Part shown: positions 48,087 through 63,200 of the stretch, in pieces
How positions within the stretch are numbered: the stretch's first letter is position 1
Layout of the letters: the number at the start of each line of letters is the position of its first letter
NCBI RefSeq assembly: GCF_026571515.1
Contig: NW_026857357.1
Location: forward strand, 248,001-312,000
Origin: Ruditapes philippinarum
Lineage: Eukaryota
Reading direction: 5' to 3'
DNA: 64,000 nt
The notes under the pieces: generated by a model
Databases searched by the model: none
The model's input: only the letters and a program-made list of their open reading frames with translations
Told to the model about the DNA's origin: nothing
Made by a program: the position numbers and the translations under genes

Positions 48087-50141
48087 AACTGGATCACAGT
48101 ATTATGTTATACAAACTGCCATAAAAAGTAATCAATAAGCTAATGAGAGACCCAGCGTGTTGCAAACATTATACACAAATAATTAAAGTTGTTCGCTAAG
48201 GCAGTTGTGTACACTACAAATAAAACGTTATAAATTTGCCATTGAAGAAGAGTGTTTTTATATGAAAGTTTCAACAATTACTTGTGAAAAAACAAAGTAA
48301 AATTGAAGTAACATTTTGCTGGAATATGATGTTTGATTTATCTACCACAGACTATTAACTAAGTAAAGGTAATTTAAATGACAAGGCATGCCACAATCGA
48401 TTCAAACAGTATTGAAATAAAGTCGAAAATCGATATCAAAATGAAACAAAGTATAATGAACTACGTACTAGATGACCACTGAAGACATGTACCAATATCC
48501 AAGAGAATTACTTTACCTTCTATAGGTAGTATTTATTTGAAATCGTTGGTAAAATATGATGTGAAAATACATATTTAGGAAATAAATTCTGACCTTTTAC
48601 AGATTAAAGAAAAGGTTTATTACTTTCATTATACTTATTCAGTTATTACTATGTATGTTTACTCATTTAGTTCTCTGAAAAAAAAAGAAATCCACCAACT
48701 AGTATGTAAATCAATAAGGAGAATGTAACCTGTATATGAAGATTTTCAACACGTTGAAAGTTATTCTTTTACATTTAATTACATGTTACCTAATCTAAGA
48801 ATTTAATATTTTCAACATGTTGAATATATCAATTAAAATTATAATGATGGGCCAGGTACCATTAATCGAGGGATTTCCAATTAAATGAAGAAAAAAAATC
48901 GCAAATTAAAATGTAACACGTATCTTTGGACATTAAACACGTTTAAAAATAAAAAAAGTATGTTTTCTTGATCGGACATTTACAAACTATAGATTGGAAT
49001 GTTGTTTTTTTCTCCCAAAATTATACATTTATCAAGGGATTTATCAACGTGTAGAAAAATCAATAATAAAAAAGAAGAAAGAAGTTACAAAAAGGCATTG
49101 ACAACTGCTACCACCTGCTTTCTCAGGCGGGGTCATATTTGACGGGCGTTTCGGCGCTTCCTCCAATGCCCTACAATTATGCACCTTCTTGACTGAAATT
49201 AAACTCTTGTCGTCAGAAGATGGTAATCTTAAGTTACCCCTGTTATATCTACCATGAAGCGTGCGCCGCCTATCTATTGGCCGTTCTGGTCTTCCAACCA
49301 TTGCTCTTCTCTCTTGTGCCAGACCCACAATTTGCTGATATGGCTTTGTCGCGGATTTGTCTTATTAAATGCCTATCAATTGATTGTAACGGGAAGTCTC
49401 TACAGTAACTTTCAAAGGAAAACACCAAGATCTTTAATATATCAACAAGAAGTCGGTACTGTTCCAGCAGTCTTATTATTTTTTTTCCTATGGAATGGTA
49501 AATTCAAGATGGGACAACTTGCCTGCTAACAAATTATCGTAAAACGATGCCATGTATCAGTTTTTTGTCACAGTAATTTCTTAGGAAGAAATTACTTCTT
49601 CCCACATATATTTACTAATATCAATTAAAATCCTGTCCGTTTCTACGGATTTCTAAAATATCGATAAACCAATGGAAATGTTACTTATGTTAAGGAATTG
49701 AAACCAAGATCAATGAATATTGACCACATTGATATATCAATGTTTCCTGGATATCAGGATTTTCAACATTCTGAAATATCAATGTTGAATAAATCAGAGT
49801 TTTCAACATGAGAAAGATACCTTTGATCCGTGTTTCGTCCATCATTTACTGAGATGTTTACTACATACTAAGTTAGAACAGGTTAGTATATCTGATCTTG
49901 TGTAACACCGCTTTCAATAAATAGATGGACTTGCAAACGAATTGCAAAATCATTGAATATAAATTTGCATACATTAAAATCGATATAGTTTAGTTAAATA
50001 TATTTCAAAATGAACAAAACTTCAAAAAATATTGGAGAAATATCATCACCATTTTATTCAATTCACATTTATACAACGCATTGAACACATGCTTATGTAC
50101 ATTATAATTAATTTCAATGAATAAGAACATATGGTTAGCAA

Positions 50142-53100
50142 TTAGCCAATAATTGCCGTAGTATTTGTCGATGCAGGAGAGCTTGCGCCTGCAACAACGA
50201 CGGTTGCCGTCACAGGTTTTGGTGGGTTTGTAGGTGGGTTTGTAGGCGGGTTTGTAGGTGGGTTAGTAGGCGGGTTTGTAGGAGGCTTTGTAGGTGGGTT
50301 TGTAGGTGGGTTTGTGGGAAGGTTTGTAGGTGGGTTTGTAGGAGGGTTTGTAGGAGGGTTTGTAGGTGGGTTTGTAGGCGGGTTTGTAGGTGGGTTTGTA
50401 GGTGGGTTTGTAGGAGGCTTAGTAGGTGGGTTTGTAGGAGGCTTAGTAGGTGGGTTTGTAGGCGGGTTAGTAGGTGGGTTTGTAGGTGGGTTTGTAGGAG
50501 GCTTAGTAGGTGGGTTTGTAGGAGGGTTAGTAGGGGGATTAGTGGGTGGCTTTGTAGGACCTGCTTTTGTTGTCTGTGCTACTGTTGTCGGTGGTGGAAC
50601 CGGATTACCATTTTGTCTCAGCGTATCAAAATCTAGAGCACCGCCTTTCCATAAGTTGTATAGTCGGTCTAGGAAAGAATAATTTGTTATAGTTGTAACA
50701 TATTTGCTTTGGAAATAAAATAGTCAATTTAGAGCTTAAAGGATTTCAATTTAGAAATATAAAAATTGATTCACCAAGAGTACTGAGTCTGGCCTTGGTC
50801 TATACAGGTTTGGTTCCTGGAGATTAATGCTTTACCGAGAAAGAAAACGTTTCTAGAGACATTTGCCTATGAGTGAGACTAAAAATAGAATTTGAGCAGC
50901 ACACTAAATACCGTATTCCAGTATACACTGGACAAGGTGCTTGAATGATTTAGTGCTAAAATATTGCCTTTTCACCCAACGGAATGAACTTAAAAAGGTC
51001 TAATTCATCTTAACACAGATATATGTGTGTTAATGAATGAAAAATGTAAGAATCGTCGGGTAAAAAACGATATTTTTGTCTATTATGTGATCATGATTTC
51101 TTCAAGCGTTCGAGGTACTGCTCCAGTCCTGTAATGAGTTAAATCATTTGCATATAGATATTTATCAAGTTCAATTTTATAAAAGATATGACAAATTAAC
51201 TCCTTTAGTATCTTACTGATTATAAGTCTTGATTTTACTTGAGCATCTCTTTATAGATGTTTAGAATTATGATTAAAATGCCTTAAATTAGTAGTATTTC
51301 TACATCCCCATGGGCTCGCAAAAGAATGCTTTACTGTTTTAAACATTTTGAACGTGTCACCTGGTTTATCCTACTGATTGTTTTCTTATATTCAGTGATT
51401 GTGAGGCTAGTTTTTGTAGATTGCATGGGTATGTGTATTGAAAGTGTGACTACATTTGGTCATTGTGTGGCTACGTGTGGTGATTGTATGGCTAGGTTTG
51501 GTGATTCTGTGGCTAGGTTTGGTGACTGTATGGCAAGGTTTGGTAATTGTGTGGCTAGGTTTGGTGACTGTATGGCAAGGTTTGGTAATTGTGTGGCTAG
51601 GTTAGTTATTGTATGGCTAGGTTTGGTGATTCTGTGGCTAGGTTAGTTATTGTATGGCTAGCTTTGGTGATTCTGTGGCTAGGTTAGTTATTGTATGGCT
51701 AGGTTTGGTGATTCTGTGGCTAGGTTAGTTATTGTATGGCTAGCTTTGGTGATTCTGTGGCTAGGTTAGTTATTGTATGGCTAGGTTTGGTGATTCTGTT
51801 GCTAGGCTAGTTATTGTACGGCTAGGTTTGGTGATTGTATGACAAGGTTTGGTAATTGTGTGGCTAGGTTTGGTGATTGTATGGCTAGGTTCGGTGTTTG
51901 TATGACAAGGTGTGGTAACTGTGGGGCTATGTTTGGTGATTGTATGGCTAGGTTCGGTGTTTGTATGACAAGGTGTGGTAACTGTGGGGCTATGTTTGTG
52001 ATTGTATTGCTAGGTTTCTCGGTTTGGTAATTGTGCGGTTATGTTTGATGAATGTTTGGCAAGGTTTTGTGATTGTGTGGCTATCTTTTGTGTATGTGTG
52101 GCTTGGATTTATGAATGTGAGGCTCAGTTTGGTGAATGTGTGCGTGCTGAGTTAATTGAAAAATGCTTTCAATTGTTGATCTGTTTATTTAAACCGGTTC
52201 TAGGAGTTAATGTAACTGTCTTCTTGCCCTTCTAACAATTTAGAAAAAGACATTCAGTTAATACGGAATATCTAATCCATCATTGTTGTGGCATGAGAAA
52301 ATAACTCACCAAGAATTTCCTCGCAAGTGCCACTGTTACAAAGTCCGTCACCACAACACGCGGTACATTGCTCGGTGGCCGCACGCTTACCAATATTCCC
52401 ACACACATTAACATCTGGGTTCGTCATACACTCATCCTTCCTTTTGAGTGCTTCTTTTGTCAATAATGTACAAATCTAAAAAAATTTTGAATTAGATTAG
52501 TTTGCAATATAGATTGTTTTCTTATTGTCCATTTGTACATTGGTTGTCCAAATACCACTATGACTGCCAATATTAGGGGGTCTATATTGTCATGTATGTC
52601 GATATAAAGATTTTCATATCACATTGACTTTGGAAATACATCTACAATACTAAGATATACCCATTATTTTGAGACAAGTACAATGGTACCTGGAGAGTCG
52701 TCCAACACAATATTGCAGCTGGGTCATTATATCTTCTTGTGTAAACTTTTAATTCTAGTCCTATTTTATCGTCCCTTTTGTCTATAGAAAGTATTATTAC
52801 CTTCTTTAGTACATTCTTGTTTCACATTTTTGTCATTTTGTTTTTAAGAGTCTAACTGAACAAAAGATTTTGAAACAAATTGAGCTTTGCCTGACTGATA
52901 AATAGGTTCATTAGGAACCTTTTCACGAAGTTGTGACTTCTATTGTGTTAGAATCAGCTGAGACGAACAATTTCGTAAGAGGTAACGTGTACAATAGGAT
53001 TTTTGTACGCACATAATTAAATATTTTGGAGTATATTTATACTGTCACATAAAAAAGAATATTTTTGAATGGCCAGATGAAATAAGAATATTGCGGAAAT

Positions 53101-56100
53101 AGAAAAAAGTAGGTCAATTTATTACGCGCTTATGCTTAACATATTTAGAGTAAGTTTGAGACCATTCCTTCAAAGTTAATTGTTTCATAATGTATATGTC
53201 ATGACAAGAAACAGTATTTTGGTATTTATCGAAGAAAGGTATGCTATGGTTTGCAAGACTATATAAACGTTTTATCGTTTTATCGAAAGTGTCGAGCAAA
53301 CCCCAAAAAATATTCGTCCACTGGTTTCATTAACAGTATCTGCCAAGAAAGAAAAAGTTTTGAAAATATTGATAAAAAGGAAAGTTTTAAAATAAGCGAA
53401 TAAAGATAATAATTTCAAAACAAGCTACCTACAAGTTTTGGAAGACATGTATATCTATAGCTGTCAGTTCCATCGAAATCGAGTCTTTTGGATCCACAAG
53501 CCTGAAAAATAAAATCCATATTGTTATTTCAATAATAAAATTCGCCCTCCTCGATCCACCAGGGTGACTTATCTCGACTCTGCCCGCTGCCCGACTGTGT
53601 GACTTGTTTATGCCTTTCGCGTTACCTTGGTGATCTCTCTGATTAAACCTTCATTCTTGAATTGATCATTAAATTTGTTTGAGTTCATATGAGTCAATAT
53701 AGAGAATTGCAAATAATATGTTAAAATATATTCGTAGTATGATTTTGATAGTTACTCCATAGCCAGTCGGCGATTACAGAATGATTCTACCTACCCGACC
53801 AGTGCAGACGAAAGATCAATCGGTACTACATCCGTGTCGTGTTATCTTGGTCAGCACTTTTTACAGTCTGTAAGTATTTTATTTTCCCCTAAAATTCTAA
53901 ATGGTTTTGTCCAGATTGAGAATGACCAAGTCTATTGAAGTTATTATGGGTTGTTTGTTCATCTTTAAAGGTTAAAGATAAGATCAGATTATAAAACGCA
54001 ACCTCCATATTTTGAAAAGTGAAGACGCAGCTCAAGCAAACCAAACCTGAAACATTTTTCAATTAACAGTGTCAGGGCACTTTTAAAAGATTCAAATTTT
54101 CACAACTTTGTTTTCAATTGCTTATCAAATACTTTAAACATTTTGATCTTGTTTATCTGTGTCAAAATGTTTAAAAGCTCAAATTTAACAGTACAGATCA
54201 ATTACATAGTTACCTCATTCGGTTGACATGTGGTTTCGGACAAACAGTCCACTGGCCTATCGACATCGCCTTGTTCAGAGTCCGACTTTGTATTATCGCA
54301 AAGGTAACACCTTGTTGAATTTGTATCGGCTGAAATGTAAAGCGAATTAAATATGATTTATATTGGTTGTAACATCTGGAGGGTATAAAAGCTTTCACTG
54401 TCGAAGATTGAAACTTTTTTAGGCTGGTGCTACGGCATTACATAAATAGGTATACTTTGTCAATTGCTTCTCAATCGCAGTCATTTATTTGGTTTAAAAT
54501 GTTTACGTGAGAATACGATTAAATGGTTAGATTATAGTAATTATATATCAAGATTCAAGACTGAATGGGGCATAAACAATTTTATTGCCATCAGCCATAA
54601 CCGTGTTAAAATATTACAAACACATAAACACTTTTTTTTAAATAAAATGAAAATGAATTAAAATGAAAAAAAAAGTAAAAAAAAGTAAAGAAAAAAAAAA
54701 TGAAATAAATAAACCTATGCATTACACTCATAAACATCAGAATAATTCAGTATATAGCAACAAAATATAACAAATTGTGTTGGAAATTAGTTAAAATCAG
54801 TTACCAGTTAATGTTCATGCTAAAGTTGCATAGTACATGTGTGATTTTCTGTACTGCATTTTGTATGTTACGAAACTATTCATTATAAAGGAACGGACAT
54901 ATCTAAAGTTTGTTAATACACTGCTTTTAAAAAAATGGATGCGTATATAATGTAATTCAAAATATTTTTTCAATTCTCTTTTTATAAGCATTTTAACAAT
55001 CGATATTATTTTTTGCTTGTAATGAAGTATATAATAATGCACGGGTTATTGTTCAAATGCTTTGTAATTTATCATTAGGCATAATTAGGTATATTATATA
55101 TTATATTATTATATGATTATATTCCTGCGCATTTGAACTCGAAACTCGAACCGTGCATTATTTTACAAACAATGCACTCAAAATTGATTACCTATTTCCT
55201 AAATAATGTACATGTATATGCATTTATAAAAAATGACACCACTTACTTTTCGTAAATGTAAATGAACAACTAAATGAACAACTATATCTAAATGAACTGA
55301 TATAGATTGATCATCTTTTCAAAAATTTGGGTGAAATCGAAGCTTACTATATTTTATCCCGCACAGTCTGGCGTTACAATCAAGACCTCCAGACTTCCGC
55401 TTTAAATCACAACATCTTGAGCAAGCTACAAGGTCACCTCTCTTATGTAAATCACGCCTTCCTATTGATGGAGATCCGCCCACACCTGATTTGCATACCT
55501 AAACATAAAACATTTCCATATATTATTTAATTGAAATACTTTCTCAAGCTGTGTGTTTATTATAAACAGGGACCAAAAATATTTTGGTCCCAGTGATAAC
55601 TTCAGGAGCATCACAGGATTTGTTGAAAATTGAATTGGTAAACTAACTAATTGTTAAAGAGTATTATTATTAATTTTACTACATTTATTATTATTCATGT
55701 ATAATATTTTATGGGACACCTCTAACCGTCATTTATTCTTAGATTTCACGTGAAGTGCCTCCTTGCATCCTAAACTAAAGTCAATTTTAACGAAATTGAT
55801 ATAATAAGAGAGTTACATTTCTTTTCAATTTTCGCGTAAATTAATTTTTTTTAATTTTCGCGTAATTTCATTTTTTTACCTTTGACATAGATATATTTTT
55901 TCAATCAATTTTAACTATCAAAGGTTAGATCATTTTCTTGCCATTGATCAATACAGCTTGGACGAATGAATGTGACAAACTCATTCCATACAAAAACGGC
56001 GCTTCACTTTCACAAGGAACTGATTACTTATGTACATGCCCAAGCAGAGGTTCAGTGCAAATGACCATAGAAAGGATTTCATGATCAATCCTATACCGCG

Positions 56101-59100
56101 ACGCCAGATTCACAGTGTAAAATTTTACCTATTGAGCTAACCGGATGGCTTGCCGTGAAAATTTAGTATGCTACAGACTTATATACCAACATATTAAACA
56201 TTTATATATCCACTTATTAAATATGTATATACCAACTTACACTTTTTGCTCGGCATCCACCAGTGTAAACTACTGTAAGTTGGTCAGTAATTAGTTCGTC
56301 CATATAACAGACCTGAAATTAAATTTAATTTAAAGTTAAATCATCCATCCATCTATCCATTACACTTTTGTTTCATGTTGGGTAAATACATGGAAATCAT
56401 TATTACTTGATTATTAGTAATAATTTTTGCATTGGCAATTATGTTACGCAACTAAATTTTAGCCGAAAGAAAAATACATGTATATGGACTGTAAAATGAA
56501 AAACAGGAGAAAGGCTTAATCAAGTCATTTGGAACATAATTAAATAATTAATATTTTCTTCAGCGATTATATTAACATTCATCAAATGCACAGTAATCAA
56601 AACGATTTTTACCAGTCTAAAATGCCCAGAAAGGATAATTCATGCATATGGTGTCTAAACCATTTTAGTTACAAAACATATAGTCCAGGCTGTTTTATTT
56701 AAAATTTGAATAAGAATTAAAATCAAATAATAATTTAAATATGCTGTATGGTGATATTTAAGGGCAAAGTCCAACATTTCGTTGTATAGTTATGTTTATG
56801 GCACATCACTTCAAGCTGTATCTATAACATGAGCGGCGGGATACTGCTTTATATGACAAATCTGTTGACTAGAAAATATTTGTTATAGTGACTGAAGTAG
56901 GTACCCATTTATATTTATGTTAGGTAGATAAGCTTATAATATAAGGTATGATTTTTTATTGACATATATAAACCAAACCACTAGGCGTTGGTTATTTTGC
57001 TAACATTCATTTAAAAGTTTTTATATATCCATTTAGCCTGTCAATTATCTTTATAAATCTAAGTTCCTTTATTTGAGGAGAACAATGAAATTACTTCATA
57101 AATTGTCATTTCAATCAAAGGTCATTAAACAAAGTTTTTATTTATGCTTACGTTTGAGTTCTTATAAAGATCATTACCTAATCGGAGCAGTATCTTAGAC
57201 CCGAGTTATTTATAGAAAAAGATAATAACCTCATTATTAGGACCCGAGCTATTTATAGAACAATACAATTATATCATAATTGAGACCCGAGTTATTTATA
57301 GAACAAGACAATTATGTCATAATTGAGACCCGAGTTATTTATAAAATTAGACAATTATGTCATAATTGAGACCCGAGTTATTTATAGAACAAGACAATTA
57401 TGTCATAATTGAGACCCGAGCTAATTATAGAACAAGATACTTACCTCATCATCAGCGCATTTCTGGGAACCAGAACAAAAGTCAAGACTGGCAACTCTGT
57501 CACATTTTTTACACGTCAAATCCGACGTCTGTCCACTTACTGTAACTGTAGAATGTATCATGATGATAGAATATGTCATATTTGACGGAATAAAAGTCCC
57601 AGGGGGACCCGCCCCATTGGCGGTAACGAGGCTTGTCGAGGTACGCTTTTTCCAATCTGAACCGCAACTGCATATCAGATATTGTTTTGGGTGCATATTC
57701 TACCATATTCTATCATACTTCATATTCTTAACTTTAATGAAACAAATCTTGATGGAATTTAATGTCAATTGATCCAATTCTATTTTCTTACAATAGCGTA
57801 TGAATTCATGACGGCAAATTGACCTCATCCAAAGCACGCAGTTTCATCTTAAATACAGGGAAATGACGTAATTTTAACGACGTTCATTCATAAAATGCGC
57901 TTAAATGACGCCATTGTATAGAATATGAATCATGTGGCAACCCCAATACAAGATGGAATTTCCGGCATGGGTAAAACTAATGGGAACACCATTCCGATAT
58001 GCAGACTGTTATGCTGAATGGTCGGTATGGACAATCTTTCAAATACGGCCATATATAACTTAGTAACGAATTTACAAATGCTGCATTTTGATAAGAGGAA
58101 CGTTTTTCATTTATGCAGCAGCCGTGTTTATTGATAATATGAGTTTAACGATTGTCCAATGAAATTCGACGTAACAAACATTATTGATAATGATCCAACG
58201 TAATTCATCCTTTCATATATGGACATCAATTAAATGAAATTAGGTCAATGTTTAATGGAAATCGGATGATGGTGTTCATTAAAGATGAATTTAAATTGTA
58301 GGTATAGTGTAAATTGCATATGAAAATGTTGGTATAGTTTAGATTACATATTAGTGGGTCGCGAAAATACATGACAATGTTATCTTAAACCGCAACTTTT
58401 TTACACGCGCCCTTTTGACAAATGTTTTTATTGAAATCATTTTAGCAACTCGATATGATTAGCATCAATTTAGTTTTTTTTAATGTTTATTTGATTTTTT
58501 TCATCATTTTTTGTTTTATTATATAAAAAACACTTTTCTGGGTATGTGATAGATAGACTATTATTTTCGTGTCGGTTCATTACTAAATTTATTGATCTCC
58601 CCAGATGCTCGCACAATATAATTTTACTCGACCCATTCAATAAGTTCAGTATTGAACCTATACTCATTCAATATCCATTTATTACTCAAACAGTCCATAT
58701 TCATTATTAATTACATCAAATTTACAATAATAAATGTTTATTAATTTTATTCATTAATGTAAACATTTTAATAGCATAAATAGGAAATTATGTATAATTT
58801 GTTATATACTGTTACAACACTTTTATGTGACTTAATTATACATTGATGACATAAGAATAAATCAAATATATGTCAATTTATATCAGTATTAGGTAACCTC
58901 AACTTGGATTTCCTTATCTCTCCACATTACTTTAATGGTGATAAGTGATAAAATATGACCTCATTTTATGATGACATGACCTATTTGAACATTAAGGAAC
59001 ATTGTTTAAAGGAAATAATATTTCATATTCATTTCGTTATATCGGTCATTAAGTTTACAATTAGATAAGATAAATAGTTTTAACTTAAAGCGGTATAACG

Positions 59101-60280
59101 GACACAAATCTGAATTGAATATAAGATAATTGAAGTATCATGCCCACCAAGTGTAAGCCGGTGCCTCATAATACCGAGGTACTTAACAGTTTAACACAGA
59201 CAACAAAAGTTAGAAGAATAAAATACGGGAAAATACGTTGAATATTGTAGCAAAGACATGTCAATTATATCATTGTTTATTCCATTTAATGTTTGCATGT
59301 AAGCAATTATGTACACAACATGGCTATTAACATGTATCTACTGACTAGTTCTCACAATAATATTTCCAAGGCAATAACAATTTAACAGTTTCAAAAGCAA
59401 AACCAATAGTAATCTTTATTTGTTTAGTGCATTTTTATCCTGTCTGAAAGTGTGGATTTTCTCTATGGCATCATGCATGTACCAAATATCTAAATGGTTG
59501 TTTATTAAAGACAATTGTCTTGAAAGATATGAAAACTAAAAGTAAAATGGTGAAATAATATACTTGGTTCTTAATCTGAATAAAATAATAAATTTTCTCC
59601 GTCGTATATGTAGCATATCAATAACAATACAATTAAAAAGAAAAAAGTTTAACTACAGGCAGTTGCATGAGGTCTAGGAGACACTTGAGACTGTTTATCC
59701 CTTGTATCTTGGAATTATGGGTACCTTGGAAGTATGAGGCACCAGTGTAATTGGTAAGGGCACAAGTCAAATGAACTTAATTTTTTTGTCATAATTGTAT
59801 TCAATTTTGTATTTTCCGATGCAAACATAATCAATTATCCATTTGACCAACGGACATGTTTCAAATGATTATTTAGAATGTATGGGCAGTGGCGGATTCA
59901 GGCAAGCAGCCCCTCTCCCAGCTCAGCTCAAAGATACGTTCATGAACTGGGCTGGAATATGTTTTTGTCAGTTTCATGCCTTATTGGCTGTAGTGTACTC
60001 CCTTATCAAAACTTTAAATGCTGTCATCAGGTTGTTAATCAACTCCTTGGGGTAACGTTTAATTTTCAAAGGGAGTAGGGCAGTCTTTTGATATTTAGGC
60101 AGATTTTGTATTTTGTCCGTAACATTTTCCACACCATTATGCTACTGTCAAGCTCTTGAAATAGATTACTTATTCAACTGTTTAACTACTTTCAATTTTA
60201 TTTTGAGAATTAGAGGAAAATGTCAAACTCACCTGAGAAAAACGTAATTACAGACACGCTAATTATGGAATATGTAACTC
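50142..60280 (-). CDS. Uncharacterised secreted protein: two Ly6/uPAR (three-finger)-like Cys-rich modules plus Pro/Thr-rich (T[NK]PP)28 tail; start-codon exon not found
   Basis: Minus-strand exons 60280-60233, 57545-57445, 56312-56241, 55498-55348, 54329-54214, 53501-53433, 52475-52310, 50668-50142 have canonical AG/GT junctions and match in phase throughout. Product: ..VTYSIISVSVITFFSVTVSG-QTSDLTCKKCDRVASLDFCSGSQKCADDEVCYMDELITDQLTVVYTGGCRAKSVCKSGVGGSPSIGRRDLHKRGDLVACSRCCDLKRKSGGLDCNARLCGIKYTDTNSTRCYLCDNTK..CLSETTCQPNEACGSKR..YRYTCLPKLICTLL..VCGNIGKRAATEQCTACCGDGLCNSGTCEEILDRLYNLW..(TNPP)n..STNTTAIIG*. An AATAAA lies on the minus strand at 50053-50058. Confidence 0.88.
50221..50556 (-). repeat. 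Coding 12-bp tandem repeat, 28 units, encoding T[N/K]PP
   Basis: Variation is concentrated at synonymous third positions of the minus-strand frame and there are no frame-breaking indels, consistent with coding selection. Confidence 0.9.
51450..52140. repeat. 21-bp minisatellite (GGCTAGGTTTGGTGATTGTAT)n in the last intron of the three-finger gene
   Basis: Visible array with local 42-bp (dimer) and 63-bp (trimer) higher-order periodicity and degenerate edges. Confidence 0.92.
53751..53975. mobile_element. Degenerate ~220-bp MITE (TTAA-flanked family)
   Basis: CAGTGCAGACGAAAGATCA...AAATGGTTTTGTCCAGATT...AAAGGTTAA, homologous to 21030-21248. Confidence 0.5.
55990..56150 (-). mobile_element. Degenerate tRNA-derived SINE
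   Basis: Minus strand GCCATCCGGTTAGCTCAATAGG (A box)...ACTGTGAATCTGG... followed by GATTGATCATGAAATCCTTTCTATGGTCATT, resembling mollusc SINE bodies (recognition, not a search). Confidence 0.5.
57196..57437. repeat. 43-bp tandem repeat, ~5.5 copies (GAGACCCGAGTTATTTATAGAACAAGACAATTATGTCATAATT)
   Basis: GAGACCCGAG at 57282, 57325, 57368 and 57411. Confidence 0.92.
59154..59749. mobile_element. ~600-bp Tc1/mariner-like MITE
   Basis: Ends TAAGCCGGTGCCTCATAATACCGAGGTAC and GTACCTTGGAAGTATGAGGCACCAGTGTA form an imperfect ~27-bp TIR with TA at both ends. Confidence 0.65.
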
Positions 60281-63200
60281 CTGAAAAAGAAAGTACCAAA
60301 ACTTGAACAAAGATTTTTTTTTTCGTGTTAATTTAAAGTTTGTTTTAGCTGATACCTGGGGCTTATATAACAAGCTTCATGTTCGAGGGTAGATATATAA
60401 AAGTATAGTTTTAGTCAAATCAAGCCCAGATAATGTTTTTTTTTATCTTCTTTAGAAAGGGCAAACGCGTGCGTTTTAAAATGTTGTTATTATGGACTCA
60501 GAACATGTGAGATACTTATCACCTAAACAAATATCATTTGACGTACAAAAAATGTGTCATAAAGATAGCAAAATGTAAACAAAATGATATTTTGTGATAC
60601 TATCGAAATGCTACGTCATTATAAATGTATTCATTGCCAAAGAGAAGAAGAACTAAAAGATTAGTAATTCAAAATGGCCGAGGTGTAAAAATTGTAATAT
60701 GCTACAGATGATAAAAATGTAAGTAAAAGCTAAATAAATGCTTTTAGAGTTAAATGGGCCTTAAAAAGTACAATGATCGCATTACAATAAACGTTAGACA
60801 ATTTCAAGAAATCATATAACATTACCCAATTACTTATCCTCTAAGATAATACGTCGAAATGTTCTTGTGTCTGATTGCCCCGATAATTCGTAGCGTTCAA
60901 TGATATACAAGGTGTCACAGTTTCATCTACATGTGATTAATTTCAATTAAAAACATATATCTTTTAATGCTTATTCTACATCTGGATAAGATTTTTTGGG
61001 TTGAATTATGGAAATAATATTGGGCTCATGCTATATGTTGTAATGTGACAGACCAGGTTTATATGTAATAATGTGACAGACCTTAGACATGGCCTATTGA
61101 AATCTAAACTTTAAACTAAAGGTCGTCTAACGCGATGAAATTGAAACTGTTTTAGACCCAGTTATTTTGAAAAAAAAACTTCAGACTCTGTAGACTGGTA
61201 GAGTGCCATAGTAAAATGCAAAATACTGACCACTCCACTGGCACCGACCAGCTGTGGCAAAAACAAACAGCTAGATACGCAGGTGGTGATATTTGTTTTT
61301 AAAGAAATCGGTACCATGCGCATATTTCTTTATATTGCTATGGCCATGATGCTCAAATTTCTAAAAAAAAATCCAAAATTATTGAAAAAAAACAACTTAA
61401 AATTTGATGCCCTTGAATGTATTTGGTGATTGTAATAAAGTGCTTGGCACCTTAAAAAATTAAGGGTTCAGGTACACGACAAGTTTCGTTTCATAGTTTA
61501 ATAAATGTTGTACGAAAATAATCAGTACTGTTAAAAAAAGTATTTGGGAATTACACATAAAAGCATTAATAACGTAGGGTCTTATATAATATAAACGGCA
61601 TTATTGATAATTGTAGCAAATAAGACAATAAAAACAAATATCTTCTTAAAACACTTAAATAGTAGTACTATATAATAATATGTCTATATTTTATGACAGA
61701 AGTATAAATATAACAATAAATAAAAATAGGAAAATAAAAGTAAAGTAATAAAAGATAACGCCGAACCTTTCATGATCTTCTTTGTTGTGTATATGCCTAA
61801 ACTCTACAAACATGTGTCAAATTTTACATATATAACAATGAACTTATCTTTGACATCACGGAATTAGGTCATAGCAAGGTTATAGAGGGCAACATAAAGA
61901 TCGTCTGCTATTACATAAGAGGCAATATTTTATTAAGTCACCTATTATTTTCAATTAAATAAAATGTATAGTTGCTAAATATCTAGTGCAAGCTATCATT
62001 AAAGAAGGACTTATATCTATAATAAGTAACAATCCTTAAAATGTATCCATGTATTGTCTTGCTTTCATCATTCACGTACTAAAGCTCTCTTTAATATCAA
62101 CCTGTAAAAATTATTATATATATCTGACTTCAAGACGTATAAATAATTGTATAAATGTGATAGGTGTCAGTAGGCCCATTGGGCCGGGTGTTCTGATAAT
62201 TGTCTTCATTATTGTATATTGTATTGTTTAAAACACATGTCACTTTATTAAACAATTTACTTATTTTACTTACTTACTGTATACAAGATGCTATTTGAAT
62301 TTAAAAAAAGCAAATGGTATGTATGTATCAAGCTTGTATATTCCCTTAAATGATGTGTGGTGATTGAACAGGAACGCCTTTATTATATACGGTATGTTGA
62401 TTGTTTTCTTTTTGACATTGGTATGATTAAACTGCAATAATGATCGGTTCTTAAATCTGCAGTCCACGACTTATGATTTGTTTCGAAAAAGATTTTTTCT
62501 TCTTCTGAATATCCACTCAAAATAACATTTGAATTTCATAAACACCATATAGTAGTTTTTATGACCAGACTCCAGGTTTATATGGCAGATTCCCTATAAA
62601 TATCCTTTGTACTTTGGTCTTCCGGTTGAAAAGTCTGGTACCCGGAACTAAACACAAAATTGTAACATATTTTGTTTTAACCATGCAGTGCAAAAACGCA
62701 AAGAACATTCATAGAACACCAGTCACCATTACTAGTACACTTACCTCTTTCAAAATTTAATATTTTAGTAAATAATCGGTCCGGCAAATAAATCTATTTC
62801 ACTAATTCGTAAAATCTTTTCTAAATATTTAACAATATCTGTATAATGAATTAATTGTATGACAGTTCTGTCCAACTATCCATTAGCATTCTGGATAGTC
62901 TTGGTTAACATCAAGAATTATAAATAATGAAACTCGTACTATTGATATATCATTTGTAAACCCTGATGTTTCACTACCATACGTTTTTATATTGAAATCA
63001 CTTATTCATCAAATAAATCGAGTTTTTGATTAAATGATACATATACGTAAATTCATACATGTATATAGATACAATTTTTAATCTTTAAAACGGATTTCTG
63101 AGCTTGACCAGCCAAAACCCTTTGAGCTGTGCTTAATGAAACAAACACATGAAAAAACATACCTTATTATGAGCAATTAATTACAATATCAATAATTTTT

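What the first reader, a model, noticed from the sequence alone, without database searches (positions are those of the whole stretch)
50142..60280. Hidden 8-exon gene: tandem three-finger-like modules with programmed IG-RR / IG-KR sites, an extensin-like tail and a matching IIG terminus
Seen: each module has CxxC...CxxCC...CN..C spacing (12 and 14 Cys), and at the equivalent loop just before CxxCC they carry SIG-RR-DLH-KR and NIG-KR. The protein itself ends ...AIIG*. Established: CC..CN is the Ly6/uPAR three-finger C-terminal signature; KR/RR are prohormone convertase sites; a C-terminal Gly is the substrate for PAM amidation. Inference: convertase plus carboxypeptidase processing would nick each module into a disulfide-linked two-chain form, as with the insulin C-peptide, and expose three similar -I-G termini or Ile-amides. 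Recurrence of IG at all three positions suggests a shared processing, sorting or docking signal. There is no GPI/TM tail, so it would be a soluble, mucus- or matrix-tethered three-finger protein. I do not recognise a characterised family.
Basis: partly seen in the sequence, partly recalled or inferred. Interest (0 to 1): 0.78.

Follow-up and report, generated by a model that had tools for sequence, protein, structure and literature searches.

The report
Clam tandem three-finger mucin-tailed gene
A clam gene missing from the protein databases searched encodes a secreted protein with two three-finger (Ly6/uPAR-type) domains and a mucin-like tail, and its relatives keep hormone-style cut-and-amidate motifs in the same loop, which points to an unusual but still untested maturation step.

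Summary
On the minus strand, 60280 to 50142, eight exons have AG/GT borders and matching phases. They encode a signal-peptide core, two Cys-rich modules (12 and 14 Cys), a conserved linker, about 28 PPTN/PPTK repeats and the end ...AIIG-stop.

A Mercenaria protein (P0001, "proteoglycan 4-like") maps exon for exon with the same architecture and ends AIVG. The genome is inferred to be Ruditapes philippinarum.

AlphaFold models of the whole-length relatives P0009 and P0001 give two Ly6/uPAR three-finger domains. Every listed PDB match is of that fold.

The dibasic site is a family trait:
- It occurs in 29 of 32 module-1 loops, 27 of them with Gly directly before it.
- It occurs in 17 of 23 module-2 loops, 10 of them with Gly directly before it.
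- The module-1 site lies in a segment with pLDDT under 50.

A C-terminal Gly marks the gene's own clade.

Convertase nicking and amidation fit these motifs but are untested. No reads could be laid, and the ATG exon is only a candidate.

The parts
61767..61773 (-). Tentative ATG mini-exon: ATG AAA G followed by GT, giving Met-Lys plus the first base of a Gly codon.
   Evidence: (top of 16 in-phase candidates, donor score only 4 of 7). It would give the N-terminus M-K-G, as in the Mercenaria relative P0001. The implied intron of about 1.49 kb compares with 1.15 kb in the paralogue. Not verified.
60233..60280 (-).
   Evidence: Same 48-base length and phases as exon 2 of the annotated paralogue.
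57445..57539 (-). Exon 2: end of the signal peptide plus finger 1 of LU module 1 (SGQTSDLTCKKC...ADDE, 4 Cys).
   Evidence: aligned to P0001.
56241..56312 (-). Exon 3: finger 2 of module 1 (VCYMDELITDQLTVVYTGGCRAKS, 2 Cys).
   Evidence: 80.8% identical to P0001 over 26 aa.
55348..55498 (-). Exon 4: finger 3 and C-terminal knot of module 1 (6 Cys; CSRCC...CNARLC).
   Evidence: 78.4% identical to P0001.
55433..55468 (-). Module-1 loop motif S-I-G-R-R-D-L-H-K-R-G-D: two dibasic sites, the first directly after Gly, plus an RGD.
   Evidence: The homologous segment has pLDDT under 50 in both models (with 73, and 84 with 85). Family tally.
54214..54329 (-). Exon 5: inter-module junction and finger 1 of module 2 (4 Cys).
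   Evidence: 82.1% identical to P0001.
53433..53501 (-). Exon 6: finger 2 of module 2 (ACGSKRLDFDGTDSYRYTCLPKL, 2 Cys).
   Evidence: 65% identical to the paralogue.
52310..52475 (-). Exon 7: helix-bearing finger 3 and knot of module 2 (8 Cys; CTACCGDGLCNSGTC).
   Evidence: the query and 19/25.
52383..52397 (-). Module-2 loop motif N-I-G-K-R.
   Evidence: family tally.
50142..50668 (-). Exon 8: conserved linker (RLYNLWKGGALDFDTL), the Pro/Thr repeat tail, a short Ser/Thr/Ala stretch, then ...NTTAIIG and the TAA stop (50144-50142).
   Evidence: The linker is conserved in the paralogues and in P0001, P0002 and P0008.
50221..50558 (-). 12-base tandem repeat, 28.2 copies, encoding PPTN/PPTK: a mucin-like stalk.
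   Evidence: The tail of P0001 is modelled as disordered (pLDDT under 50 from residue 293).
50053..50058 (-). AATAAA 83 bases after the stop; a possible polyadenylation signal.
   Evidence: Weak evidence in an AT-rich genome.

Best explanation
This is a real and apparently intact gene on the minus strand of a clam genome, inferred to be Ruditapes philippinarum. It encodes a secreted two-domain three-finger (Ly6/uPAR, LU) protein.

The layout is: signal peptide, LU module 1 (12 Cys), LU module 2 (14 Cys), a conserved helical linker, a Pro/Thr-repeat mucin-like stalk, and a free C-terminus ...AIIG. There is no GPI or membrane anchor.

It belongs to a family I recovered only from bivalves. In most modules, the flexible tip of finger 3 carries a basic pair or run that usually follows a Gly directly.

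The most likely working model is as follows:
1. In the secretory pathway, furin- or PC-type convertases cut after these basic residues.
2. The two halves of each module stay joined by the LU disulfide core.
3. Carboxypeptidase trimming then exposes Gly, which may be turned into a C-terminal amide by a peptidylglycine amidating enzyme. The protein's own terminal Gly may be treated the same way.

The mature product would be a soluble or mucus-tethered ligand-binding protein whose third fingers are opened by processing.

Shown here: the gene structure, the family, the fold of relatives and the conservation of the motifs. Inferred: secretion, O-glycosylation, cleavage, trimming, amidation and any ligand.

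My odds: gene plus LU identity about 0.9; cleavage at one or more loop sites about 0.55; amidation about 0.35.
For: Gene model:
- Eight exons with AG/GT borders, consistent phases and no internal stop.
- P0001 aligns exon by exon at 59-82% identity, and every Cys seen in the aligned pieces matches.
- The annotated paralogue P0009 has the same exon set, including a 48-base signal-peptide exon.
- Exon 7 has one 100% match in the 1.41-Gb genome, at the window itself. The next best is 69%.

Expression hint:
- 20 of 24 listed runs hold part of the 10-kb stretch. Four are declared RNA-seq, from one study, and hold 0.08-0.10 of the sampled words. The other 16 are guessed RNA and hold 0.06-0.11.
- The exon-internal share of 31-mers is 986 of 9970 = 0.099.

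Fold:
- AF2 model of P0009: mean pLDDT 80.3, pTM 0.76.
- AF2 model of P0001: the LU-LU core blocks mostly reach pLDDT 80-95.
- The listed Foldseek matches include TEX101, uPAR, CD177, C4.4A, PSCA, Lynx2, GPIHBP1 and LYPD6; all are three-finger toxins or LU/TGF-beta-receptor-type ectodomains. The best E-value is 4.4e-4.
- VIA-align: best Z 7.9 to the GPIHBP1 LU domain, 78 of 81 residues, rmsd 2.9. All 50 rows are LU domains, three-finger toxins or TGF-beta-receptor ectodomains.
- PF00021 scores over its cut-off in relative P0012 (27.1 against 24.8 bits).
- The nearest Atlas clusters are molluscan uPAR/Ly6 clusters (score 0.92).

Motif:
- 29 of 32 module-1-type loops have a basic run, 27 with Gly directly before it. 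For module-2-type loops the figures are 17 of 23 and 10.
- In the 25 family proteins, basic runs are about 9 times denser in these loops (7.1 against 0.77 per 100 residues).
- 37 of 54 loop runs follow Gly, against 1 of 53 elsewhere (Fisher p 2.4e-14, not corrected for relatedness).
- Many relatives have full R-x-K/R-R runs, such as GRKRR, GRRRR and IGRRKR.
- The module-1 site lies in the only long low-confidence segment of the core: P0009 residues 88-99 and P0001 residues 83-94.

C-terminus:
- 9 of 26 products end in Gly, 6 of them as [IVM][IV]G. One more ends Gly-Arg after the same STNTTA as the window.
- In the tree, 6 of 8 clade-A rows end in Gly and 0 of 14 clade-B rows do.
- P0010 (C-type lectin end) and P0012 (MAM end) also end MIG and IIG.

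The genome holds Cu2_monooxygen (PF01082) exons (34 matches). This is permissive only.
Against:
- No start-codon exon is verified. One in-phase candidate 73 bases upstream carries a stop at codon 6, and the better candidate has a weak donor.
- No window-encoded product appeared in two database searches that covered its expected length. The locus may be unannotated or set aside as defective.
- Pfam finds nothing in the single exons or in P0001 and P0009. PDB sequence matches are insignificant (LYPD6, E 0.24). All VIA-align Z values are under 8.
- The window's own sites are plain dibasic, without an Arg at P4.
- 3 of 32 module-1 loops and 6 of 23 module-2 loops lack a basic pair.
- In P0001 two residues separate VG from KR in module 2.
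- The terminal Gly is absent from clade B and from 2 of 8 clade-A rows.
- The tallies count related sequences, not independent events.
- I found no report of a three-finger domain nicked or amidated inside a finger (listings only).
- PF01082 also covers dopamine-beta-hydroxylase-type enzymes.
Confidence: 0.55

Rival explanations
1. The Gly-basic motif and the terminal Gly are binding or structural features and are never cut. They could be a glycosaminoglycan- or receptor-contact patch at the tip of finger 3. The protein would then act as an intact single chain.
For: - Fingers are the usual binding surfaces of three-finger proteins (established knowledge, recalled).
- The residues after the basic run are also conserved (x-D-L-V-A-C), so the whole stretch could be one epitope.
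- The window's sites lack a P4 Arg.
- Gly persists in some loops that have lost the basic pair (P0015 GNVGRA, P0024 GVIGHV), as a turn residue would.
- No literature on cleaved LU fingers was found.
Against: - Loop length varies from 10 to 26 residues while Gly-plus-basic is kept.
- The segment is modelled as disordered.
- Many relatives carry full multibasic furin-type runs.
- Gly directly before the run (37 of 54 in loops, 1 of 53 elsewhere) and a Gly or Gly-Arg end are the classical amidation grammar. A plain binding patch would not need them.
Confidence: 0.3
2. The window copy is a silent or defective copy (a young pseudogene or null allele) of a family whose working members lie elsewhere.
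For: - No product of this locus appeared in the protein database searches, although five other family members of the same species are annotated.
- No intact ATG exon has been proven. An in-phase ATG-plus-donor candidate next to exon 1 has a stop at codon 6.
- A third copy on another contig is visibly decayed, with a TAG in exon 4 and a lost Cys in exon 7.
Against: - All eight known exons are open with canonical splice sites, and all 26 module Cys are kept.
- Identity to the Mercenaria relative is high and even across exons.
- The word shares in RNA runs equal the exon share.
- An alternative intact M-K-(G) start candidate exists.
- AATAAA follows the stop.
Confidence: 0.12
3. It is an integrin-directed adhesion ligand that uses the RGD in finger 3 of module 1, in the manner of RGD-bearing three-finger toxins.
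For: K-R-G-D-L sits in the flexible finger-3 loop. RGD is also present in P0009, P0016 and P0027. An RGD in loop III of a three-finger toxin (dendroaspin) is known; this is recalled, not checked.
Against: Only 4 of 32 module-1 loops have RGD. The closest relative P0001 has RSD and others have RND or KRD. The conserved unit is basic-x-D-L, so RGD looks like a chance variant.
Confidence: 0.05
4. It is a membrane-tethered C4.4A-like protein: two LU domains, a Ser/Thr/Pro stalk and a GPI anchor. On this reading the annotated stop would be an error.
For: The architecture resembles C4.4A, and structure matches include 6iom and 6ion. The frame after the stop reads a hydrophobic stretch.
Against: The stop position and the ...TTAI[IV]G end are shared with P0001. 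Relatives with other C-terminal domains also end in [IVM][IV]G. AT-rich sequence gives hydrophobic read-through by chance. No hydrophobic C-terminal signal lies before the stop.
Confidence: 0.03

Closest known systems
Ly6/uPAR (LU, three-finger) domain superfamily, Pfam PF00021 and relatives
   Same: - Cys framework CxxC...C...C...C...C...C...CC...CN.
- Three-finger fold in models of relatives.
- Each domain is split over several exons.
- Relative P0012 passes PF00021.
- The CxxCC...CN variant is shared with LYPD6, the best PDB sequence hit, though at an insignificant E of 0.24.
   Different: - Most members fall below the Pfam cut-off.
- There is an extra Cys pair (CxxCC ... CNxxxC), and two further Cys in finger 3 of module 2.
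- A conserved Gly-plus-basic motif sits in finger 3.
- There is no GPI signal.
Two-domain three-finger proteins (2D-TFP), including amphibian sodefrin precursor-like factors (SPF)
   Same: - Secreted proteins made of two three-finger domains (PMC11659521, passages read).
- A fragment cut from a sodefrin precursor at a Lys-Arg site was recovered from courtship water (PMC4776240, passage read).
- UniRef names the Dreissena relatives P0021 and P0022 'Sodefrin-like factor'.
   Different: - Homology to amphibian SPF was not tested here, because I held no SPF sequence. The name is only a label.
- SPFs are 160-280 aa without a mucin tail.
- Their known peptide product comes from the C-terminal end after a frameshift, not from a finger loop.
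C4.4A / LYPD3 and TEX101 (tandem-LU proteins)
   Same: Two LU domains in tandem. For C4.4A, a Ser/Thr/Pro-rich stalk follows them (recalled). Both are among the structure matches.
   Different: Those proteins are GPI-anchored (recalled). This one ends in a short polar tail with a terminal Gly. They have no conserved dibasic finger motif that I know of.
Prohormone- or conopeptide-type processing signals (X-Gly-Lys/Arg-Arg, or a terminal Gly or Gly-Arg)
   Same: The same motif grammar occurs at three places in one protein, and the residue before Gly is often hydrophobic.
   Different: Here the signals sit inside a folded, disulfide-locked domain and at the end of a long glycoprotein-like tail, not between peptides of a precursor. 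No processing has been shown.
Lubricin/PRG4-type and mucin Pro/Thr repeat stalks
   Same: Tandem short Pro/Thr-rich repeats. NCBI names the Mercenaria relative 'proteoglycan 4-like'. The tail is modelled as disordered.
   Different: The repeat unit (PPTN/PPTK, 4 residues) differs even from the Mercenaria tail. The likeness is compositional only. It is not an extensin, as it has no Ser-Pro4 unit.

Membership tests
Ly6/uPAR (LU) three-finger domain | Cys framework with N-terminal CxxC (or a single Cys), internal Cys pairs, and a C-terminal CC...CN | tested here: met
   Read directly from the exon translations. Both modules have CxxC...CxxCC and ...CN. The spacing was compared with CD59 from memory only.
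Ly6/uPAR (LU) three-finger domain | Three-finger beta fold | tested here: inconclusive
   Met for the whole-length relatives P0009 and P0001. The window's own spliced product was not folded, because the joined step was left out by rule. The fold is extended to it by 52-82% per-exon identity.
Ly6/uPAR (LU) three-finger domain | Pfam PF00021 (or PF00087) above the gathering score | tested here: not met
   There were no hits for 5 single exons, but fragments of 29-174 aa are a poor test. There were no hits for P0001 or P0009. Only P0012 passes, at 27.1 against 24.8 bits; that is 1 of 9 proteins scanned.
GPI-anchored Ly6 proteins (CD59, Lynx, C4.4A class) | C-terminal hydrophobic GPI-attachment signal | tested here: not met
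   The sequence ends ...KPVTATVVVAGASSPASTNTTAIIG-stop. The same end type occurs in relatives. No predictor was run.
Two-domain three-finger proteins / SPF | Signal peptide plus exactly two three-finger domains, secreted | tested here: met
   The signal peptide is only partly defined, because the ATG exon is tentative.
Two-domain three-finger proteins / SPF | Sequence homology to amphibian SPF and their alpha/beta Cys patterns | not tested
   I held no SPF sequence. The only link is a UniRef name on the Dreissena relatives.
Convertase-processed, amidated secretory proteins | Gly directly before a dibasic or multibasic site in an exposed segment; terminal Gly | tested here: met
   and 84/85.
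Convertase-processed, amidated secretory proteins | Demonstrated cleavage, basic-residue trimming and alpha-amide | not testable with these tools
   Needs mass spectrometry or expression experiments.
Extensins | Ser-(Hyp)4-type repeats of plant cell-wall proteins | tested here: not met
   The repeat is PPTN/PPTK, in an animal gene.

The most novel reading that the evidence does not exclude
A family of bivalve three-finger proteins matures like prohormones. Each LU module is nicked by a convertase in finger 3, trimmed and alpha-amidated. The result is a disulfide-linked multi-chain domain with Ile- or Val-amide ends. In the window's clade, the far end of the mucin-like or lectin- or MAM-bearing protein is amidated as well. 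To my knowledge this would be the first case of amidation signals built into the loops of a three-finger fold, and a new way of switching finger 3 on.
Probability: 0.3. Interest if true: 0.75.

Novelty: new variant of a known kind. Interest (0 to 1): 0.55.

Why it matters
Three-finger (Ly6/uPAR) proteins act through their finger loops as receptor modulators, toxins, pheromones and adhesion proteins. Invertebrate members number in the thousands and have almost no known function; 2,086 were counted in 25 molluscan genomes (PMC13719153, passages read).

A conserved cut-and-amidate motif at the tip of finger 3 would add a regulated maturation step to this fold. It would also give a concrete biochemical handle: a mass shift, two-chain forms and amide ends. 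That handle could be used to study one molluscan family in farmed clams.

The case also shows a multi-exon gene of an annotated family that two protein-database searches did not return. If the processing does not occur, the finding is still a clean new member of a bivalve two-domain three-finger family with a mucin-like stalk.

Tried and rejected
- **Pfam on single exons.** Nothing useful; the pieces are too short.
- **PDB sequence search with the family profile.** Only LYPD6, at E 0.24-0.27.
- **Representative search with exon 7.** Gave 8 hits. Two of them (P0004, P0005) are long repeat proteins unrelated to the family and were dropped. P0006, a 70-aa fragment, was not used in the tallies.
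- **Third homologous-protein search, with the five-module Mactra protein.** Returned only the query.
- **P0010 against the own genome.**
- **Search for the ATG exon.**
  - Scans for Met plus a hydrophobic stretch plus a donor gave no convincing candidate.
  - Comparison with the paralogue's first-exon region showed no conservation.
  - A candidate at 62684 (MVKTKYVTILCLVP) became unnecessary once the 48-base exon at 60280 was found.
  - Reading exon 1 upstream in frame meets a stop without a Met.
- **The 21-base minisatellite at 51395-52142.** It reads as open Thr/Pro/Ser/His-rich frames on the minus strand. I rejected it as coding because every relative runs straight from the module-2 end into D-R-L-Y-N-L-W.
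- **GPI anchor by read-through of the stop.** Rejected because the end is conserved in relatives.
- **Literature searches.**
  - 41: leads on SPF and the invertebrate LU survey.
  - 47: badly designed; none of the 15 listed papers holds the word sodefrin.
  - 61, 62, 76: listings only, nothing on cleaved or amidated LU fingers or on this protein.
  - 74: 0 papers with sodefrin plus bivalv-.
  - 75: 0 papers with LU domain plus mollus- plus furin.
  - These cover only the held open-access library.
- **Supplements are closed.** The sequence lists of the invertebrate LU survey (PMC13719153) may already contain this family. Supplementary Table S2 of PMC4776240 holds the Lys-Arg-cleaved fragment. 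I saw neither.

Full report
**What is in the sequence.**

The window is AT-rich (GC 0.28-0.39) and comes from a 1.41-Gb genome in 15,874 contigs. On the minus strand between 60280 and 50142 lie eight exons:

| Exon | Coordinates | Content |
|---|---|---|
| 1 | 60280-60233 | VTYSIISVSVITFFS |
| 2 | 57539-57445 | finger 1 of module 1 |
| 3 | 56312-56241 | finger 2 of module 1 |
| 4 | 55498-55348 | finger 3 of module 1 |
| 5 | 54329-54214 | finger 1 of module 2 |
| 6 | 53501-53433 | finger 2 of module 2 |
| 7 | 52475-52310 | finger 3 of module 2 |
| 8 | 50668-50142 | linker, repeat tail, stop |

Every exon has an AG acceptor, and all but the last have a GT donor. The left-over bases at the three split codons fit each other. 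The two modules hold 4+2+6 = 12 and 4+2+8 = 14 Cys.

- S-I-G-R-R-D-L-H-K-R-G-D in exon 4.
- N-I-G-K-R in exon 7.
- ...N-T-T-A-I-I-G-stop at the end of exon 8.

A 12-base repeat of 28.2 copies encodes PPTN/PPTK. An AATAAA follows 83 bases after the stop.

**Is the gene real?**

A search of 1.84 billion representative proteins with exon 7 alone gave 8 hits at E up to 0.001. Two of them are unrelated repeat proteins.

The best hit, P0001, is named "proteoglycan 4-like [Mercenaria mercenaria]" (490 aa). It has exactly the predicted architecture and ends ...NTTAIVG. In a local tblastn it aligns to seven of the eight exons, with alignment ends at my exon borders. Identity is 59.5, 80.8, 78.4, 82.1, 58.6, 77.0 and 69.0%.

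Within the same genome, exon 7 has one 100% match, the window itself, and then matches of 69% and 53% on two other contigs. Exon 4 behaves alike.

The 69% copy is the annotated protein P0009, "LOC132732231 [Ruditapes philippinarum]". That is my basis for naming the species. P0009's gene has the same exon set, including a 48-base signal-peptide exon of the same length and phase as the window's exon 1.

The 53% copy carries a TAG in its exon 4 and has lost a Cys in its exon 7.

Read-level RNA evidence is missing. I worked beside that stretch afterwards.

What remains is indirect:
- 20 of 24 listed runs hold part of the 10-kb stretch.
- 4 of these are on record as RNA-seq, from one study, with 0.08-0.10 of the sampled words.
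- The other 16 are guessed to be RNA, with 0.06-0.11.
- The share of 31-mers lying wholly inside exons 2-8 is 986 of 9970 = 0.099.

The figures agree, but the call does not say which words are held.

No product of this locus appeared in two database searches whose length ranges cover it (6 proteins of 598 candidates; 23 of 4,928). Five other family members of the same species did appear in those searches. So the locus seems unannotated or set aside.

**The start codon.**

In the paralogue the Met lies in a tiny exon (M-L-Q-S-K-I plus one base) 1.15 kb upstream of the 48-base exon.

In the window, the best in-phase candidate of 16 is ATG-AAA-G|GT at 61773-61767. It would give M-K-G, the same first three residues as P0001, with an intron of about 1.49 kb. 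Its donor matches only 4 of 7 consensus positions.

A second in-phase ATG-plus-donor candidate lies 73 bases upstream of exon 1 but has a stop at codon 6.

**Fold and family.**

| Test | Result |
|---|---|
| AF2 model of P0009 (22-row family alignment) | mean pLDDT 80.3, pTM 0.76 |
| AF2 model of P0001 | same secondary-structure pattern; core blocks mostly 80-95; tail under 50 from residue 293 |
| Foldseek against the PDB | listed matches include TEX101, uPAR, CD177, C4.4A, PSCA, Lynx2, GPIHBP1, LYPD6/6B; all are three-finger toxins or LU/TGF-beta-receptor-type ectodomains; best E 4.4e-4; single-domain rows at probability 0.97-0.99 |
| VIA-align second look | best Z 7.9 (GPIHBP1, 78 of 81 residues, rmsd 2.9); all 50 rows shown are of this fold; all Z under 8, which the tool calls middling |
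| Pfam on 9 family proteins | only 1 (P0012, Mactra) passes PF00021, at 27.1 against 24.8 bits |
| PDB sequence search | insignificant; LYPD6 at E 0.24 |
| ESM Atlas | nearest clusters are molluscan uPAR/Ly6 clusters, score 0.92 |

So this is a divergent branch of the Ly6/uPAR superfamily. Structurally it is a two-domain three-finger protein.

Family members recovered come from Ruditapes, Mercenaria, Mactra, Dreissena and Mytilus, and from unnamed transcript or metagenome contigs. Their architectures vary:
- LU-LU alone.
- LU-LU plus a Pro/Thr tail.
- LU-LU plus a C-type lectin (P0002, P0010).
- Five LU plus Ig plus MAM (P0012).
- LU-LU plus a C-terminal part to which the database attaches Pfam PF01549 (P0028).

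**The loop motif.**

I took the last loop before CxxCC in every module of the 25 family proteins, plus the window's exons 4 and 7.

| Module type | Modules | With a run of two or more K/R | With Gly directly before the run |
|---|---|---|---|
| Module 1 | 32 | 29 | 27 |
| Module 2 | 23 | 17 | 10 |

- Misses in module 1: P0010 (first module), P0013 and P0014.
- Misses in module 2: P0015, P0017, P0021, P0022, P0024 and P0025.

The loops vary from 10 to 26 residues. Many relatives have full multibasic runs (GRKRR, GRRRR, GKKRR, IGRRKR, KRKR).

As a control within the 25 proteins:
- Basic runs are 7.1 per 100 residues in these loops, against 0.77 elsewhere.
- 37 of 54 loop runs follow Gly, against 1 of 53 elsewhere (Fisher p 2.4e-14).
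- The sequences are related, so this p-value overstates independence.

The module-1 site lies in the only long low-confidence segment of the folded core: SKPSIVGKRELQ (residues 88-99) in P0009 and SGSPSVGKRGLQ (83-94) in P0001. The module-2 site lies between a helix and the last strand, at pLDDT about 59-73.

The residue before Gly is I, V, A or F in the window's clade and mostly S in the other. In P0001 two residues separate VG from KR in module 2.

**The C-terminus.**

Of 26 products, 9 end in Gly: the window, P0001, P0003, P0007, P0008, P0010, P0012, P0013 and P0014. Six of these end [IVM][IV]G.

P0011 ends ...STNTTAGR and the window ends ...STNTTAIIG.

A maximum-likelihood tree of the two-module core (22 rows, none dropped; the window, P0010, P0012 and P0028 not included) splits the family into two clades, with support 100/97. 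Six of 8 rows in clade A end in Gly; the exceptions are P0009 and P0002. None of the 14 rows in clade B does.

The terminal Gly is thus one clade's trait. It is kept behind tails of very different length and even behind lectin and MAM domains.

For products from unnamed contigs I could not check that the end is a stop codon.

**How it most likely works.**

Established knowledge, recalled and not checked here: convertases cut after K-R, R-R or R-x-K/R-R in exposed segments. Carboxypeptidases E/D remove the basic residues. A C-terminal Gly is the substrate of the peptidylglycine amidating enzyme.

Applied here, each module would be nicked in finger 3 and held together by the LU disulfide core. 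That connectivity is inferred from the canonical LU pattern and was not read from the models. Up to three ends could become Ile-amides.

The genome has 34 exon matches to the Cu2_monooxygen family. That family also covers dopamine-beta-hydroxylase-type enzymes, so this is only permissive.

My estimates are about 0.55 for cleavage at one or more sites and about 0.35 for amidation. The function of the mature protein (soluble or mucus-tethered ligand binder, pheromone-like signal) is inference only.

**Rival readings.**

1. An uncut binding or structural patch (0.3).
2. A silent or defective copy (0.12).
3. RGD-mediated adhesion (0.05). RGD is present in only 4 of 32 module-1 loops and absent from P0001.
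4. A GPI-anchored C4.4A-like protein (0.03). This is contradicted by the conserved end.

**Comparison with what is known, and novelty.**

LU proteins are already catalogued broadly in molluscs: 2,086 in 25 genomes, some with MAM or Ig domains. The text of that survey does not mention furin or cleavage (PMC13719153; passages read, 0 occurrences of those terms). Its supplementary sequence lists, which I could not open, may include this family.

Amphibian SPFs are secreted two-domain three-finger pheromones (PMC11659521, passages). A fragment cut at a Lys-Arg site from a sodefrin precursor has been recovered (PMC4776240, passage).

No paper in the held library combines sodefrin with bivalv- or LU domain with mollus- and furin. 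Searches listed nothing on cleaved or amidated LU fingers; I saw titles and abstract starts only.

I therefore class the gene as a new variant of a known kind. It is a clear LU-superfamily member whose family carries a conserved, prohormone-style motif at a fixed place in the fold.

The Mercenaria proteins P0002 and P0010 show that architecture. I did not locate the clam locus itself.

Noticed in passing
window 51395-52142: A 21-base (also 41-base) minisatellite of about 30 copies lies in the intron between exons 7 and 8. On the minus strand it reads as long open Thr/Pro/Ser/His-rich frames (PSHTITKP...). Together with the exon-8 repeat it causes the strong GC skew of 50001-52000. I judged it intronic, because all relatives run straight from module 2 into the DRLYNLW linker.
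   Followed up: partly
window 57197-57437: A 43-base tandem repeat, 5.6 copies at 88% matches, lies directly after the donor of exon 2, inside the intron.
   Followed up: no
L020/L021 (own genome, contig C5517, 23000-41999): A third copy of the gene looks decayed. There is a TAG inside the module-1 loop where the first Gly-basic site should be, a Cys replaced in the module-2 finger, and the start of exon 7 is missing from the match. It is very close to the C14838 copy, so it may be a haplotig or a recent duplicate.
   Followed up: partly
own genome, contig C14838:117771-117938 (+): An exon matching the copper type II monooxygenase family (PF01082, 36.7 bits) lies about 13 kb from the paralogue P0009 (C14838, about 131,700-138,340). 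With 34 such matches in the genome this may be chance.
   Followed up: no
own genome, contig C13007 (about 368,000-489,000): At least seven weaker matches to the CxxCC...CN part of exon 7 cluster on one contig. This is probably a tandem array of the clade-B two-domain genes, perhaps those of P0018, P0023 and P0024, which share one 637,856-base contig. I did not check that this contig is C13007.
   Followed up: no
window 60355-60379 (-): An ATG in phase with a CAG|GTATCA donor lies 73 bases upstream of exon 1, but with a TAA at codon 6. It is either chance or a disabled alternative first exon.
   Followed up: partly
I did not examine it.
   Followed up: no
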